The notes beneath the pieces were generated by a model. The model searched no databases. It saw nothing but the letters and a program-made list of their open reading frames with translations, and had not been told where the DNA came from. Below, in pieces: positions 27,327 to 33,613 of a stretch of 64,000 nucleotides of DNA. Position 1 is the first letter of the stretch, and every line of letters begins with the position of its first letter. The position numbers and the translations under genes are program-made. The DNA lies in the IMG/VR virus record IMGVR_UViG_3300044712_001255, positions 186,001 through 250,000 of that record. The stretch is one strand, 5' to 3'.

Positions 27327-27410
27327 GCGTAGATCATAGTTGATCTCATTCGAGCAACGTGCATGCCGTATACAACGCGCGACGGACAGCCCTCATGCGG
27401 GCGAGAGGAG

Positions 27411-27484
27411 TGCACCCCCTCGGGTTCGAACCGAGACTAGCCGGTTTATGAGACCGGGGCTCTGACCGATTGAGCTAGAGGTGC
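27411..27484 (-). tRNA. tRNA with anticodon CAT (elongator Met or Ile2); CCA not encoded
   Basis: Acceptor GCACCTC/GGGGTGC+A; D-arm TAGCTCAATCGGTCAGAGC; anticodon arm CCGGT-CTCATAA-ACCGG; T-arm CTCGG-TTCGAAC-CCGAG; G1-C72 argues against initiator. Confidence 0.92.
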
Positions 27485-28488: not shown

Positions 28489-28925
28489 ACTTTTACCTCA
28501 ACGTAGGGAGCATCCTCTAGACGCGTCCTGCCAAGTGATGTGATTCCCCACGTGCCGTAGTGGATCTTTTCCGCAGCACCACTAGCATGCAAGTCGTAAA
28601 GTGTCCGCTGAACTTGCGACAAGGTGCCAATTAACCGTACAACGTTAGACGCCGTGAGAGTTGCCCAAATATGGTATGCACTGCACTCGCCGTCCACAAA
28701 CAAGATCTGAAGAATTGCGTCAGAACGATGTCGAAATGTGTGTAAAGGTCTCATCGGTTCTGGTGCATATGGGTTAGCCTTGTTAGGTTGCTTGTCTTGC
28801 ACCTTCTCAGCTGCCGCCACGCGATCTCGGACCTTTTGCGCCTCGAGACCAACCCACTTTGACAGTTCCTCGGGACTCCCCTCCAGTTCGACGGGAGTCC
28901 CATTAATGGTATACGTTATCTTCAC
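28485..28925 (-). CDS. hypothetical protein, possible winged-helix C-terminus
   Basis: ILQILFVDGECSAYHIW...VQRTLYDLHASGAAEK...TWGITSLG resembles a wHTH (weak). Confidence 0.5.
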   Translation of the reverse strand: MKITYTINGTPVELEGSPEELSKWVGLEAQKVRDRVAAAEKVQDKQPNKANPYAPEPMRPLHTFRHRSDAILQILFVDGECSAYHIWATLTASNVVRLIGTLSQVQRTLYDLHASGAAEKIHYGTWGITSLGRTRLEDAPYVEVKV

Positions 28926-29581
28926 TTGCGTTTGCCTCTCCGGGCGCGCTTCGCAGCACGCTCCTCGCGACGAGCTGTCTTCTCAGCAGTGATCGTCGCC
29001 TTGTCACGGTTCTTGGAACCCTTGGGTCGACCGCGCCCGCGCTTCTCTCCCGTCGTCGGAGCTGCAGGCTTCTGCGCAAGTTCTGCGACGACCTTGCGCT
29101 TGCGGCGGACCTGACCCGTCGACTCAAACACGGTCTCCGGGTTGCGTCCCTTGGGCGGACGCTTGAAAGAGAATCCCTCGATGATTCCACGCTTCCAATT
29201 ATTCATGCATTGTTGCTGCCTAACGGGATCTGACAACCGAAGAGATCCATCAGGATATGCGTCTTCTTTCATTAGGTAGACTCGAGTGTCCAACCATGGT
29301 TTTCCAGGTAAACAGGTGATGTATCTTTCGATAATGACGTAATCACCCTTTTTAGGAAGAAAAGTCGGGAGCTCATCTGCAGTATCCCAATCAATTGCGT
29401 CTTCCATCCATGAAATATCGGGTCGTTGAGCTTGACGTCGTGCAACAAGTTCTTCATTAGACATGGACGCAATCGCCCATGAAGTATCTTCATCTTCAAT
29501 GATCTCAGAAGATGATTCATTTGACTCGACAGGAATTGTCGCGTCAACAATCTCAATATCTTCGTTTTCTTCCGAATTCAT
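28922..29581 (-). CDS. acidic N-terminus, SH3-like middle, AT-hook basic tail (putative DNA-binding protein)
   Basis: LPKKGDYVII; KRGRGRPKGSKNRDK AT-hook. Confidence 0.65.
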   Translation of the reverse strand: MNSEENEDIEIVDATIPVESNESSSEIIEDEDTSWAIASMSNEELVARRQAQRPDISWMEDAIDWDTADELPTFLPKKGDYVIIERYITCLPGKPWLDTRVYLMKEDAYPDGSLRLSDPVRQQQCMNNWKRGIIEGFSFKRPPKGRNPETVFESTGQVRRKRKVVAELAQKPAAPTTGEKRGRGRPKGSKNRDKATITAEKTARREERAAKRARRGKRK

Positions 29582-29584
29582 GAT

Positions 29585-30277
29585 TCATTCTACCTTATTA
29601 GGTGTGGAACTACACTTGACGTCTTTCCAAAGAAAACCACAAACGGGTCTCACATGACGAGCGCGATAAATTTGATGAGCATCATCATGACCCTGTGAAG
29701 TTAGTTCAAGCACCGCGTGTTTGATAGAGGGAAAGATTTTGATAACGTTTCCCTCTAGATCACATTGCGCAATTTGTTTTCGTTGTAGTTTTGATAACTT
29801 TTCGCAGGTTTCTTGACGTACTTTACGCCCGCTTAACGCAATGCTAAGTTTTTGTTTCGTCTTTTCAGAGGTGACTTTCCCTTGATGAGACGCTTTCATT
29901 TTCAAGATTGAATCAGCTGAATGCGGCCCAAGTTTTTTGCCTTTATGAGCAAGACTCATTTTACGTCGAGTTTCTTCACTATGTTTTCCTCGAAAGCCGT
30001 CACCACCATCTGTACAGTTATATCCCTTAGGGGCTTTTGCGCCATGAGAGATTATATGGTGACGCTCTAACTCGTCCAACTCAGATTGAGTTTCTACATT
30101 TTCAAGGATTACCCACAGAAATTTATCACCTGAGCAACGCAACGCTCGGTGAAATGGAAAACTTGATCCATGGGTGGCGAAATAGAAGTGCTGAGCACAG
30201 CGATGTTCAAGATCAAATTTTGTTTGACCTACATACGCTTTCTCAGAAGAAATATTGAAGGCGAGGTAAACTATCAA
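29585..30277 (-). mobile_element. free-standing GIY-YIG homing endonuclease with NUMOD3/NUMOD1 repeats
   Basis: IVYLAFN...AYVGQT...R..QH, GYNCTDGGDG; HSEETRRKMSLAHKGK (NUMOD3); KQIAQCDLEGNVIKIFPSI (NUMOD1). Confidence 0.88.
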
Positions 30278-30495
30278 TCCTTGTCACCCACCCACACGTT
30301 ACCGTGAATATCAAGCGATGTCGAGAACCCTAGCACACGGGCACGGTACTCGAATGCATTCGCTCGATCTGGGTCGACGAACTTGAAGTGATATTTGCGG
30401 TCAGAATGGTCCCTGTCTGCTAGAGAGACCTCGTACTCATTATCTGCTTCGTCTCGGGCAATGCCTTCTAGACGACGATACTCTTCATTTGTCAT
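30274..30495 (-). CDS. hypothetical protein
   Basis: Start placed at MTNEEYRR after SD GGAGA. Confidence 0.55.
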   Translation of the reverse strand: MTNEEYRRLEGIARDEADNEYEVSLADRDHSDRKYHFKFVDPDRANAFEYRARVLGFSTSLDIHGNVWVGDKD

Positions 30496-30848: not shown

Positions 30849-30913
30849 TAAGCGTCGTCATCAATTTTTGTTTTTTCTGTTTCGTGACATCGACGAGTTC
30901 ATCGCTCGTCGAC

Positions 30914-31001
30914 TGGTGGAACATCCCGAGAATCGAACCGGTGCCCCGAAGGGGCGGGAGCTCCGACTAAGCTCGGTATCCCAAGCTCTGGTCTACGCCC
31001 C
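30914..31001 (-). ncRNA. tRNA-like RNA (88 nt) with encoded CCA and non-canonical anticodon arm
   Basis: GGGGCGT/ATGTTCC-A-CCA acceptor (G3.U70, A73); GG-TTCGATT-C T-loop; GCCCC-TTCG-GGGC arm; upstream GGTTATACT -10. Confidence 0.6.
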
Positions 31002-31098
31002 CGAGAGCATCCTGCTCACAAGACGTCCCGTACGGCAGGTTACCCTGCAGCAGGTAAGTATAACCATACCACAGGGCCGTGCCGTGTACACATGTGGG

Positions 31099-31929
31099 TT
31101 ACTGGTAGGAGAACTCACCAACCTTGAAGAGACCCTCACCACCCATACCCAACAGCATTTGCTTGCCCGAAGATCCGAAACGATTCTTTGTGGTGCCGAG
31201 GATGCGTTGGCCGTAGAACTCTGACTTCTTATCGTCGTCGATGTAAAGATGCATATGGGCATCTACGGCATGCTTGACAGTGTTCTTACCTGCAAACTCT
31301 CCCGATTTGGTCACCTGGCCCACCAGGACGAGGATGGGATACACACCGTTGTATCCCTGCTTGCAGAAGTCGGTGAGCTGCTCGACCACGCGGACCTGAG
31401 ACGCCGGGATGATGTTGCCCGGACCGTACTTGCCGTCGTTGAAGGTCTGGAGAGAATCCGCCATGAGGAAGAAGTCCTTGCCCGGATTCATGTCCATGAG
31501 GTACTTGGCGTGGTCCACCATCGAAGACGAGTGGCCTGACCAGAGTTTGGGGTTCTCGACGCTGGCGAGGGGACCCACCAGCTCGTCCTGACCAACGTAG
31601 AAGTGAGAGTCGAGCTTCATGCGCTCTGACTGCATCTTGGTCTGGAAGAGTGACTCCTCCCGGGTGTTGAAGAGGACGATCGCGTCATTCCGCAGCGAGA
31701 TGGCGTTGGCCAGCTGCAGGGAGAGCGTGGTCTTGCCGGCACCGGGGGTGCCAGTGAAGAGGATTGCCGTGGAGGGGACCGCACCGTTGCCGGTTGCGGA
31801 GGCGAACAGTTCATCCACCCAGTCGATGCCGAATGAGATCCGCCGCCGCATGTGGGCCGGGACCTCGATGGAGTCGATGGTGGCTCCCTGAGGGAGATCG
31901 CGTAGCGAAACATTCAGTTTCATTGACAT
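31099..31929 (-). CDS. RadA/Sms-like RecA-family ATPase (no Zn finger or Lon domain)
   Basis: Walker A GTPGAGKTT; MADSLQT; VGQVTKSGEFAG...KHAVDAHMHL; KNRFGS. Confidence 0.85.
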   Translation of the reverse strand: MSMKLNVSLRDLPQGATIDSIEVPAHMRRRISFGIDWVDELFASATGNGAVPSTAILFTGTPGAGKTTLSLQLANAISLRNDAIVLFNTREESLFQTKMQSERMKLDSHFYVGQDELVGPLASVENPKLWSGHSSSMVDHAKYLMDMNPGKDFFLMADSLQTFNDGKYGPGNIIPASQVRVVEQLTDFCKQGYNGVYPILVLVGQVTKSGEFAGKNTVKHAVDAHMHLYIDDDKKSEFYGQRILGTTKNRFGSSGKQMLLGMGGEGLFKVGEFSYQ

Positions 31930-32395: not shown

Positions 32396-33613
32396 ATGGC
32401 AAAGACTACGCTATCAATCACCAACTTCCTAAACTGCGCCAAGCTGCTGCCGGCGTTCGTATCAATATTGATTCGCGCAGACCATGGCGTTGGGAAAAGT
32501 GACCTGACGAGAGAACTTGGTGAGTTCTTCAGGAATCGCGACTTCGATGGTAAGGGTTTTCCCGTCATCGACCGGCGACTCTCTCAGCTCACTGAGGGTG
32601 ACATGGTGGGTCTTCCCAGCACCGACGGCGAGGTCACCCGCTTCAATCCTCCCGATTGGGTGAAGCGTGCGTGCCTTGAGCCGTGTATGTTGTTCCTTGA
32701 CGAGATCAACCGCGCTACCCCTGAGGTGATGCAGGCTGCATTCCAGTTGGTGCTCGACCGTGAGCTCAATGGGTGGAAGCTGCATCCGCAGACTCGGGTG
32801 TTTGCTGCCGTCAACACCGGTGCGAGCTACACGGTGAACGAAATGGACCCGGCGCTGTTGGACCGTTTCTGGGCAATCGACCTGAAGCCCACCGTTGAGG
32901 AGTGGCTTGCATGGGCTCGGAAGCGCGAAGACATCCCCGAGATGATCGTGGACTTCATCCAGGCGAATGAGCGTCACCTCGACCCTCCCGTTGACTATGA
33001 GCTCGGTAGCAATACGTCGTCTCGTCGTTCGTGGCACCGCCTCGGCCGTGCTCATATCGAGGCAAAGGTGGATGACAAGCCCGATGATCCGATCTTCTTC
33101 CACATGTCCCTTGGCTTCGTAGGTCTGGAGTCTGCAACTGCATACGTGGACTTTGCCAAGCACTATGATGCCCAGGTCTCTGGCACTGAGATCCTCAACA
33201 AGTTCGCCAAGAAGCTGCACAAGGATTTCAAGCCAGGTGACATCGGTACCCCCGATGACAAGACTGTGTACACTCCCAAGGTCCTGAAGCGCCTGGAGCG
33301 CATGGGCCAGGAGCGTTTGGTGGGCCTGATCGAAAAGGTTGCTGACGCTATCCGCACTGAGTGTGCCGGGAAGGGTCTCACCCCCGAACAGGGTGCATCG
33401 GTTGGCAAGTTTGCCACGCTGCTCCCAGCAGAACTGCGAGTTGCACTGTGGTCCAAGGTCACTGACAACGAGCTGAATGACATGAAGCTCAACAAGGACG
33501 TGCACAGGTACATCGCGCCGTTTATCATGAAATCGTTTGGAGTTCCCATGGGCCGCGCAGGTGTCGGCGTAGCGCCCAACATTCCAGATGCTTTCAAACC
33601 TGGTAACAAGTGA
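32396..33613 (+). CDS. MoxR-like AAA+ ATPase
   Basis: HGVGKS Walker A, LFLDEINRA Walker B, FAAVN, MDPALLDRF, SRRSW. Confidence 0.85.
   Translation: MAKTTLSITNFLNCAKLLPAFVSILIRADHGVGKSDLTRELGEFFRNRDFDGKGFPVIDRRLSQLTEGDMVGLPSTDGEVTRFNPPDWVKRACLEPCMLFLDEINRATPEVMQAAFQLVLDRELNGWKLHPQTRVFAAVNTGASYTVNEMDPALLDRFWAIDLKPTVEEWLAWARKREDIPEMIVDFIQANERHLDPPVDYELGSNTSSRRSWHRLGRAHIEAKVDDKPDDPIFFHMSLGFVGLESATAYVDFAKHYDAQVSGTEILNKFAKKLHKDFKPGDIGTPDDKTVYTPKVLKRLERMGQERLVGLIEKVADAIRTECAGKGLTPEQGASVGKFATLLPAELRVALWSKVTDNELNDMKLNKDVHRYIAPFIMKSFGVPMGRAGVGVAPNIPDAFKPGNK

What the first reader, a model, noticed from the sequence alone, without database searches (positions are those of the whole stretch)
30914..31001. 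88-nt CCA-ending RNA with alanine acceptor identity but no normal anticodon loop
Seen (minus strand): GGGGCGT/ATGTTCC-A-CCA with G3.U70 and A73, a T-loop, a UUCG-capped long arm, and a GAGCT-TAGTCGG-AGCTC hairpin lacking U33. It has an upstream TATACT box and a TCGACGAG/CTCGTCGA hairpin right after the CCA. Established: G3.U70 is the AlaRS determinant, shared by tRNA-Ala and tmRNA. Inference: it may be alanylated without decoding, like a minimal tmRNA acceptor domain or an Ala donor for non-ribosomal use.
Basis: partly seen in the sequence, partly recalled or inferred. Interest (0 to 1): 0.62.

Follow-up and report, generated by a model that had tools for sequence, protein, structure and literature searches.

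The report
Anticodon-less alanine tRNA mimic in jumbo phages
An uncultivated 324-kb soil phage and three relatives carry a conserved small RNA shaped like a transfer RNA: it keeps the marks that the alanine-charging enzyme reads, but a closed helical rod stands where the anticodon loop should be, so it could probably be loaded with alanine yet cannot read codons.

Summary
The feature is real, but its borders and fold were drawn wrongly. The conserved unit in the window is 116 nt (31029..30914, minus strand), not 88 nt.

Four distinct homologues were aligned: window, L002, G001 and L084. A fifth variant came from a read contig. Each aligned homologue folds on its own into the same five-arm cloverleaf:
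- an 8-bp acceptor and a 4-bp T stem;
- a D arm with GG;
- a long variable arm;
- a closed rod in place of the anticodon stem-loop.

Ten pairs show compensatory double changes. G1-C72, G2-C71, G3.U70 and A73 never change.

ARAGORN and Rfam call neither tRNA nor tmRNA. The best weak hit is tRNA-Sec (18.6 bits against a cut-off of 47).

The closest known kind is the 8/4 "allo-tRNA", some of which carry G3:U70 and are charged with alanine. This RNA differs in having no anticodon loop.

Alanylation, expression and function are untested.

The parts
30914..31029 (-). Whole tRNA-shaped RNA, 116 nt as conserved (G1 at 31029, encoded CCA at 30916..30914).
   Evidence: CM R1/R2 matches over the full model. 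The MFE is a five-arm cloverleaf, z -3.24.
31022..31029 (-). Acceptor 5' strand GGGACGUC (G1, G2, G3).
   Evidence: Pairs with 30925..30918. Four of 8 pairs show double changes, and pairs 1-3 are invariant.
30918..30925 (-). Acceptor 3' strand GAUGUUCC (U70 at 30920). It is followed by A73 (30917) and CCA (30916..30914).
   Evidence: The tail is CAA in G001 and CUU in L084.
31003..31019 (-). D arm: GU-GAGC-AGGAU-GCUC-UC. The stem core is 31017..31014 with 31008..31005, and the loop holds the conserved GG.
   Evidence: Two stem pairs show double changes. The Rfam tRNA-Sec alignment reads it as a 6-layer D stem in G001.
30956..31002 (-). Closed rod in place of the anticodon stem-loop. It consists of base helix GGGGGC/GCUCCC (31002..30997 with 30961..30956), 3x3 loop GUA/GGA (30996..30994 and 30964..30962), helix GAC/GUC (30993..30991 with 30967..30965), and a tip hairpin.
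   Evidence: The base and the GUA/GGA loop are invariant across homologues apart from a C/U swap in L084 that keeps pairing. GAC/GUC becomes GGC/GCC in G001 and L084.
30968..30990 (-). Hypervariable tip of the rod: CA-GAGCUUGG-GAUA-CCGAGCUU-A.
   Evidence: Five different sequences, always a hairpin or a short loop. L002: GGGAUC-GAGUU-GAUCUC. X5 contig: GGUCCG-CUU-CGGGCC. G001: UAAACG. L084: UGCG.
30943..30955 (-).
   Evidence: Kept as a hairpin of 4-5 bp with different loops in the relatives.
30926..30941 (-). T arm CCGG-UUCGAUUC-UCGG: a 4-bp stem and an 8-nt loop here (7 nt in G001 and L084).
   Evidence: Two stem pairs show double changes, and UUCGA is invariant.
31030..31062 (-). A -10-like TATACT (31062..31057) and a conserved leader with hairpin GCAGG-GUAA-CCUGC (31048..31035).
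   Evidence: Identical in L002 and the X5 contig except 3 bases just 5' of G1. No -35 by scan. Its role as a promoter is inferred.
30890..30912 (-). Hairpin UCGACGAG-loop-CUCGUCGA directly after CCA.
   Evidence: The stem is kept in L002 with a 5-nt shorter loop. There is no U tract, so it is not a consensus terminator. It is absent as such in G001 and L084.
31099..31929 (-). Upstream neighbour: complete RadA/Sms-like RecA-fold ATPase, 276 aa (not part of the RNA).
   Evidence: It is separated from the RNA by a homing endonuclease gene in L002 and by about 12 kb in G001.
30274..30495 (-). Downstream neighbour kept in every homologous locus: a 73-aa protein of unknown function.
   Evidence: Synteny in L002, G001/L077 and L084. 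The model has pLDDT 94 and no PDB match. Homologues also occur without the RNA.

Best explanation
This is a gene for a small, stable, tRNA-shaped RNA of a clade of uncultivated soil and freshwater jumbo phages.

The RNA folds as a tRNA-Sec/allo-tRNA-like cloverleaf:
- an 8-bp acceptor plus a 4-bp T stem, giving a 12-bp acceptor branch;
- a compact D arm with GG;
- a canonical UUCGA T-loop;
- a long variable arm.

It carries the full alanine identity set: G1-C72, G2-C71, G3.U70 and A73. Where the 7-nt anticodon loop should be, the 6-bp stem continues through an invariant GUA/GGA internal loop into a closed helix with a freely varying tip.

Inferred life cycle:
1. It is transcribed from its own -10-like element.
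2. Its 5' end is cut at G1 by host RNase P.
3. Its 3' end is trimmed, and CCA is added where it is not encoded.
4. It is charged with alanine by host AlaRS, which reads only the acceptor end.

It cannot pair with a codon. It therefore acts as a non-decoding alanyl-tRNA mimic. The invariant rod base is most likely the docking site for a partner that gives it its function. That function could be a decoy or competitor for enzymes that handle tRNA acceptor ends, or an alanine donor outside normal decoding.

Shown: the conserved fold, the invariant identity nucleotides and the absence of an anticodon loop. Inferred: transcription, processing, charging and the downstream role.
For: 1. Homologues. 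L002 is 81% identical over the intergenic region, with all change concentrated in the rod tip. G001 scores 59.8 bits with R1 and 88.1 with R2. L084 scores 69 bits. A read contig from run X5 is identical except for a different tip hairpin.

2. Covariation on alignment A9. 96% of cells are paired against about 50% for slid partners. Ten pairs show double changes. The covariation score is reached by 0 of 500 shuffles.

3. Acceptor identity. Pairs 1-3 and A73 are invariant, while pairs 4, 5, 7 and 8 change on both sides.

4. Independent folding. Each homologue alone has the same cloverleaf as its MFE, z -2.3 to -3.2.

5. Not coding. Indels of 3 and 5 nt in L002 and of 5 nt in the X5 contig exclude a reading frame.

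6. Architecture. The only Rfam family that aligns end to end is tRNA-Sec, at 18.6 bits.

7. Precedent. 8/4 allo-tRNAs with G3:U70 are processed and charged with Ala in E. coli (PMC5389517).

8. AlaRS recognition. That AlaRS recognises G3:U70 in the acceptor stem alone is established knowledge, cited in the same paper.
Against: - There is no evidence of expression. All runs that hold the locus are DNA.
- No consensus promoter or terminator was found.
- Only three independent lineages were found, so invariance of G3.U70 rests on few events.
- The T stem-loop of the window copy is irregular: an 8-nt loop, or a C.C mismatch in the other register.
- The phage encodes no AlaRS, SmpB or CCA-adding enzyme that would tie the RNA to a pathway.
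- No partner for the rod was identified.
- The conserved neighbouring 73-aa protein also occurs without the RNA and has no informative fold match.
Confidence: 0.6

Rival explanations
1. An uncharged structural tRNA mimic. The cloverleaf serves only as a handle: for example an RNase P/RNase Z processing signal at the head of the downstream operon, or a decoy for tRNA-directed host nucleases or modification enzymes. In this reading G3.U70 is kept for structural or ancestral reasons.
For: The RNA always lies just upstream of the same small gene, on the same strand. CCA is not conserved. Some allo-tRNA-like RNAs are reported as inactive in translation and possibly regulatory (PMC5389517).
Against: Pairs 1-3 and A73 are invariant while the rest of the acceptor stem turns over, which points to recognition of the identity set itself. 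A wobble pair is normally the first to be 'repaired' if it has no function. The small gene occurs without the RNA in other relatives.
Confidence: 0.2
2. An intron-bearing decoding tRNA. The distal rod (C-GUAG...CGGA-G, 20-37 nt) is removed. What remains is a 75-79-nt tRNA with anticodon loop CUCCCGC (anticodon CCC) and alanine identity, that is, a Gly-to-Ala missense allo-tRNA.
For: With introns allowed, ARAGORN draws this for all four copies, though only when its score threshold is lowered to 70-80%. The alternative stem GGGGG/CCCUU is 95% paired on A9.
Against: - It is found only at lowered thresholds. With introns allowed at the default threshold ARAGORN finds nothing.
- The alternative stem shows no double change and is broken in L084, whose loop would read UCCCCGC without U33.
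- It requires melting two all-G-C helices that every copy forms as its MFE.
- The supposed intron holds the most conserved bases of the RNA.
- The 3x3 loop is symmetric, not a bulge-helix-bulge.
- From my own knowledge, no splicing route for such mini-introns is known in bacteria or their phages.
Confidence: 0.07
3. One reading: acceptor GGGGCGU/AUGUUCC, with an anticodon-like hairpin GAGCU-UAGUCGG-AGCUC.
For: The pairings can be drawn in the window. The GGGGCGU strand still pairs at 6 of 7 positions in G001, so an alternative conformer is not excluded.
Against: The helix shows no double change and has one break. The hairpin is broken in L002 and absent in G001 and L084. It is not the MFE even of the isolated 88-mer. 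The 28 nt upstream are invariant and covary with the 3' strand.
Confidence: 0.03
4. A decaying tRNA pseudogene without function.
For: It is not recognised by tRNA finders. It lies among homing endonuclease genes in a region of gene turnover.
Against: About 90 nt are identical between the window, L002 and X5, while the flanks and the tip diverge. Compensatory changes keep every helix across 40% protein divergence.
Confidence: 0.05

Closest known systems
allo-tRNA, 8/4 type, G3:U70 subgroup (Mukai et al. 2017, PMC5389517)
   Same: 12-bp acceptor branch split 8/4. Long variable arm. 6-bp 'anticodon' stem. Compact tRNA-Sec-like D arm. G3:U70 gives Ala identity. Found in soil metagenomes and in phages. 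Some members are suspected not to serve translation. Found as sub-threshold tRNA-Sec model hits, as here.
   Different: Every allo-tRNA described in that paper has an anticodon. Here the loop is replaced by an invariant GUA/GGA internal loop and a closed helix. The discriminator is A73; most allo-tRNAs have G73 or U73.
tRNA-like domain of tmRNA
   Same: Alanine identity (G3.U70, A73), a T arm and no anticodon. The phage's own tmRNA shares the first five acceptor pairs, GGGAC/GUUCC.
   Different: It has a base-paired D arm and a variable arm. It has no tag reading frame and no pseudoknots, and is 97-116 nt rather than about 350 nt. No tmRNA model matches it. A complete tmRNA lies elsewhere in the genome.
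tRNA-Ala
   Same: The acceptor identity set and the T-loop.
   Different: 8/4 rather than 7/5 branch, a long variable arm, no anticodon loop, and no RF00005 hit.
Bacterial Y RNA YrlA and other non-decoding tRNA mimics (tRNA-Other of Bacillus cereus, mascRNA, plant-virus tRNA-like structures)
   Same: tRNA mimicry without decoding. D/T-loop elements are kept (PMC4201824, seen; the rest is my own knowledge).
   Different: In YrlA the free ends form the Ro-binding stem and the acceptor-like end is closed, the opposite topology. None of these combines an 8/4 branch, Ala identity and a rod in place of the anticodon loop. No Rfam hit.

Membership tests
tRNA (Rfam RF00005 / ARAGORN) | Scores above threshold with general tRNA models. 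| tested here: not met
   No hit at the gathering score or at E<=10. ARAGORN at default finds nothing.
tRNA (Rfam RF00005 / ARAGORN) | 5-bp anticodon stem closed by a 7-nt loop with U33 and an anticodon. | tested here: not met
   All copies continue into a helix. The tips are loops of 3-6 nt of unrelated sequence.
AlaRS substrates (tRNA-Ala identity) | G3.U70 wobble pair with A73 and G1-C72/G2-C71. | tested here: met
   Invariant in 4 of 4 distinct homologues while pairs 4-8 vary.
AlaRS substrates (tRNA-Ala identity) | Actual aminoacylation with alanine. | not testable with these tools
   Needs a charging assay.
allo-tRNA / tRNA-Sec-like fold | 12-bp acceptor branch as 8/4 (or 9/3). | tested here: met
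   8 + 4 in the window, L002 and G001. L084 can be read as 8/4 or 7/5.
allo-tRNA / tRNA-Sec-like fold | Long variable arm, 6-bp anticodon stem and a compact D arm. | tested here: met
   The tRNA-Sec model aligns end to end at 18.6 bits, below its cut-off of 47.
allo-tRNA / tRNA-Sec-like fold | An anticodon loop, and use as an adaptor in translation. | tested here: not met
   There is no 7-nt loop in the conserved fold. The 'spliced' reading is weak.
tmRNA | Tag-peptide reading frame with a resume codon, pseudoknots, and detection by tmRNA models. | tested here: not met
   Only 97-116 nt. ARAGORN -m and Rfam give no tmRNA call. The true tmRNA lies at G000:C1:49473-49828.
tmRNA | Works with SmpB. 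| not testable with these tools
   No SmpB gene in the phage. Host SmpB binding needs an experiment.
Intron-containing tRNA (bulge-helix-bulge type) | Two 3-nt bulges on opposite strands, separated by a 4-bp helix, at the exon-intron borders. | tested here: not met
   The internal loop is a symmetric 3x3 (GUA opposite GGA) followed by 3 bp.
YrlA / bacterial Y RNA | The 5' and 3' ends form the Ro-binding stem, and the tRNA-like module is internal. | tested here: not met
   The ends form the acceptor stem. No Rfam hit at E<=10.

The most novel reading that the evidence does not exclude
A phage-made, AlaRS-charged tRNA that has given up decoding. Its invariant rod recruits a host or phage partner, so that Ala-RNA or the mimic itself is used outside normal translation: for example entering stalled ribosomes without a tag, feeding a tRNA-dependent alanyl transferase, or blocking a tRNA-directed defence. 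It would be a natural 'anticodon-less allo-tRNA' class of its own. A second, unrelated anticodon-less tRNA mimic sits at the same locus in relatives.
Probability: 0.35. Interest if true: 0.8.

Novelty: new variant of a known kind. Interest (0 to 1): 0.62.

Why it matters
Non-decoding uses of tRNA-shaped RNAs are few and mostly discovered by accident. Examples are tmRNA, cell-wall tRNAs, Y RNAs and viral tRNA-like ends.

This RNA is a compact natural case in which selection visibly keeps the alanine identity set and the tRNA elbow. It replaces the anticodon loop with a sequence-invariant helical module.

This gives a directly testable question: what reads an alanyl-tRNA body without a codon? 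It also gives a ready covariance model (R2) for finding more members.

It also shows that standard tRNA and tmRNA finders miss such genes in jumbo-phage genomes that already carry dozens of tRNAs.

Tried and rejected
- **Split RadA or group I intron.** Rejected. The 276-aa RadA-like protein is full length compared with hundreds of phage homologues of 250-290 aa, and there is no intron model hit.

- **Positional homologues next to RadA in 70 IMG/VR loci.** None found by blastn or nhmmer. CM R1 found nothing in the whole records G002-G005.

- **DNA pattern scans.** In viral contigs, one exact pattern found nothing and three degenerate patterns found only G001. The metagenome scan returned G001 again plus L079. 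L079 scores 12.6 bits, lies in coding sequence and has no acceptor pairing, so it was rejected.

- **Genome-contig scan.** It gave 7 hits.
  - Five lie in a conserved protein-coding gene of Nitrospinota and Tectomicrobia MAGs.
  - Five of the seven loci gave CM matches at E<=1. Three (L086, L088, L090) cover only part of the model around the rod words. The others (L090, L091) nominally span it at about 10 bits with the internal arms skipped. None has a recognisable tRNA body.
  - All were rejected as kin.

- **Other loci with P73/P219 homologues** (L080-L083, L092-L096, L003). No member apart from L084.

- **Repeated promoter motif in the genome.** None found. The element is single copy.

- **Partner genes in the phage.** No SmpB, AlaRS or CCA-adding enzyme.

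- **tmRNA in G001, to compare acceptor ends.** None over the cut-off in that 56%-complete record.

- **The 73-aa neighbour.** No Pfam or PHROG family. The model is confident, but no PDB match reaches E<=0.001.

- **Expression.** No RNA run holds the locus. Read laying gave contigs only.

- **Phage and E. coli collections.** No nucleotide match.

Full report
**Where the window lies.** The window is bases 186001-250000 of a 324,468-bp IMG/VR virus record, estimated 86% complete. Identical or near-identical DNA is held only by rhizosphere and freshwater metagenome runs. Across the whole genome ARAGORN finds 46 tRNAs, a putative ochre suppressor tRNA and a 356-nt tmRNA. None of these genes encodes CCA.

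**Checking the observation.**
- ARAGORN at default settings, Rfam at gathering scores and Rfam at E<=10 call neither a tRNA nor a tmRNA here.
Its energy is unremarkable: z -1.49, with 17 of 200 shuffles folding as well.
- The consensus scan finds no sigma-70 promoter, and no terminator at the hairpin after CCA, which has no U tract.

**Homologues redraw the borders.** The upstream gene (31099-31929, minus strand) is a complete RadA-like ATPase. Its closest relative, 91% identical, lies on contig L002.
- L002 holds the whole intergenic region at 81% identity.
- Conservation is very uneven. Nucleotides 30968-30990 are nearly all different yet still form a hairpin.
- RNAalifold on the pair pairs the 3' strand GAUGUUCC not with GGGGCGU but with GGGACGUC, 28 nt further upstream.
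- The result is a five-arm cloverleaf of 116 nt, 31029..30914.

**More distant members.**
- A covariance model of this fold (R1) finds one copy in the genome.
- It finds a 97-nt copy in G001, a 190-kb IMG/VR record whose RadA is 58% identical, at 59.8 bits and E 7e-14.
- Through relatives of the downstream 219-aa protein I reached contig L084. It carries a 95-nt copy, 69 bits with the rebuilt model R2.
- A contig from freshwater run X5 covers 30906-31061. It is identical to the window except for 8 substitutions and 5 deletions, all inside 30969-30990, and these make yet another hairpin.

**Covariation.** On the model-fitted alignment of the four distinct copies (A9), 96% of cells pair, against 40-58% when partners are slid. 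Ten pairs show changes on both sides. The covariation score is reached by 0 of 500 shuffles. These counts lean towards the model because the alignment was fitted to it. However, each sequence folded alone also gives the same cloverleaf as its minimum-energy structure, with z -2.3 to -3.2.

Helix by helix:
- Acceptor: pairs 1-3 (G-C, G-C, G.U) never vary. Pairs 4, 5, 7 and 8 change on both sides.
- D stem: two double changes.
- GAC/GUC becomes GGC/GCC.
- T stem: two double changes.

Its 'anticodon hairpin' is broken in L002 and absent in G001.

Length differences of 3 and 5 nt between close relatives rule out a reading frame.

**Anatomy, in window coordinates.**

| Part | Sequence | Coordinates |
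|---|---|---|
| Acceptor | GGGACGUC / GAUGUUCC | 31029-31022 with 30925-30918 |
| Discriminator | A73 | 30917 |
| 3' end | CCA | 30916-30914 |
| D arm | GU-GAGC-AGGAU-GCUC-UC | 31019-31003 |
| Rod | see below | 31002-30956 |
| Variable arm | GCCCC-UUC-GGGGC | 30955-30943 |
| T arm | CCGG-UUCGAUUC-UCGG | 30941-30926 |

The rod consists of a base helix GGGGGC/GCUCCC, a symmetric GUA/GGA internal loop, GAC/GUC, and a 23-nt tip hairpin.

Features that are not conserved:
- The tip is reduced to a loop of at most 6 nt in G001 and L084.
- The tail after A73 is CCA only in the window's close kin, CAA in G001 and CUU in L084.
- The UUCG loop is not kept.

Invariant features:
- the three top acceptor pairs and A73;
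- GG in the D loop;
- UUCGA in the T loop;
- UC-GGGGGC-GUA-G and C-GGA-G..CCC-GCCC of the rod base. L084 swaps C and U there, which only moves the G.U pair.

**What it is like.** The 8+4 acceptor branch, long variable arm, 6-bp stem below the D arm and compact D arm are the architecture of tRNA-Sec and of the 'allo-tRNAs' described by Mukai et al. (PMC5389517).
- Those RNAs were themselves found as false positives of the tRNA-Sec model.
- They occur in soil bacteria and phages.
- They include G3:U70 members that insert alanine in E. coli.
- They include members suspected to be non-translating.

In keeping with this, the only Rfam family that aligns end to end with a copy is tRNA-Sec, on G001 at 18.6 bits against a cut-off of 47. 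The difference is decisive for function: no copy has an anticodon loop.

**The intron rival.** With introns allowed, and only when its threshold is lowered to 70-80%, ARAGORN draws all copies as 'tRNA-Gly(CCC)' with the distal rod as a 20-37-nt intron. I rate this low for these reasons:
- With introns allowed at the default threshold it finds nothing.
- The alternative stem has no double change and is broken in L084, whose loop would lack U33.
- It requires melting two G-C helices that every copy forms.
- The 'intron' holds the most conserved bases.
- The internal loop is not a bulge-helix-bulge.
- The acceptor identity is Ala, not Gly.

**Context.**
- In every lineage the RNA lies just upstream, on the same strand, of a 73-80-aa protein, which is followed by a 219-262-aa protein with an AT-hook-like GRGRPKGSKN.
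- RadA is adjacent only in the window's close kin.
- That gene pair also occurs without the RNA, so linkage may be positional only.
- The small protein models confidently as alpha-beta-beta-alpha-beta-beta but matches nothing solved.
- The phage has no SmpB, AlaRS or CCA-adding enzyme.
- A -10-like hexamer precedes G1 by 10-27 nt in all three lineages. This is weak evidence for its own promoter.

**Mechanism.** From established knowledge, AlaRS needs only G3:U70 with A73 in an acceptor helix. RNase P, the CCA enzyme and EF-Tu read the 12-bp acceptor/T minihelix. The RNA should therefore be matured and alanylated by host enzymes. Without an anticodon it cannot be selected on a codon. The sequence-invariant rod base argues for a specific partner.

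I commit to 'alanyl-chargeable, non-decoding tRNA mimic' at 0.6. An uncharged mimic or processing handle stands at 0.2.

**Limits.**
- Only three independent lineages.
- No expression data.
- No experimental charging.
- E-values of my models are rough.
- The alignments used for pair counts were fitted to the model.

Noticed in passing
L080:941-1056 and L084:952-1072: A second, unrelated tRNA-shaped RNA at the same locus in relatives; in L084 it lies about 150 nt upstream of the family described here. It has a 7-bp acceptor CCUCGAG/CUCGGGG with G73, a canonical T arm, and a D loop AGGUGGUGAGG. Its variable arm is made of GACGATC repeats, and its oversized 'anticodon' loop differs in length and sequence between the two copies. 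Four pairs show double changes. ARAGORN and Rfam miss it, and it is absent from G000 and G001.
   Followed up: partly
window 30968-30990 (minus strand): The rod tip is replaced wholesale between near-identical relatives (window, L002, X5 contig), while the surrounding ~90 nt do not change at all. This is faster than the flanking non-coding DNA and is unexplained. It could be neutral drift under a pairing constraint, recombination, or selection for diversity.
   Followed up: partly
G000:C1:313007-313079 (minus strand; outside the window): ARAGORN calls a tRNA with anticodon UUA, which would read the UAA stop codon, in the same phage genome. Whether the phage recodes UAA was not examined.
   Followed up: no
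G000:C1:49473-49828 (outside the window): The phage encodes its own tmRNA (tag ANDNATVLRAAA). Its first five acceptor pairs, GGGAC/GUUCC, equal those of the RNA studied here. There is no SmpB gene in the record.
   Followed up: partly
whole genome G000, tRNA genes (one in the window at 27410-27484, minus strand; the main arrays at C1:257926-283308): None of the 46 tRNA genes, nor the tmRNA, encodes CCA, whereas the window's copy of this RNA does. No CCA-adding enzyme (PF01743) was found in the record.
   Followed up: partly
window 29585-30277 (minus strand); L002:4814-5362 and 1538-2266; L092:3088-3891: GIY-YIG/NUMOD3 homing endonuclease genes sit at different places around the RadA / RNA / small-protein block in different relatives, so this region is a hotspot of insertion.
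   Followed up: partly
window 28922-29581 (minus strand): A conserved 219-aa protein with an acidic N-terminus, a conserved core (DISWMEDAIDWD...GDYVIIER...PWLDTRVY) and a basic tail with an AT-hook-like GRGRPKGSKN. It has no Pfam or PHROG family and always follows the 73-aa gene.
   Followed up: partly
window 31035-31048 (minus strand): A leader hairpin GCAGG-GUAA-CCUGC (GNRA loop) between the -10-like box and G1. It is invariant in L002 and the X5 contig but absent in G001 and L084. Its role is unknown.
   Followed up: no
L085-L087, L089, L091 (Nitrospinota and Tectomicrobia MAGs): The words GGGGGCGTAGGC...GTCGGAGTCCCC recur in these bacteria inside what looks like a conserved protein-coding gene, with variation concentrated at every third base. 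This is a coincidence with the rod sequence, not a homologue.
   Followed up: yes
window 32396-33613 (plus strand): An AAA_5 (MoxR-like) ATPase gene is conserved next to the RadA block in relatives (Pfam mark in L002 and in the P0004 and P0128 contigs). Two other relatives (L081, L082) carry a DUF2201_N protein in the corresponding block.
   Followed up: no
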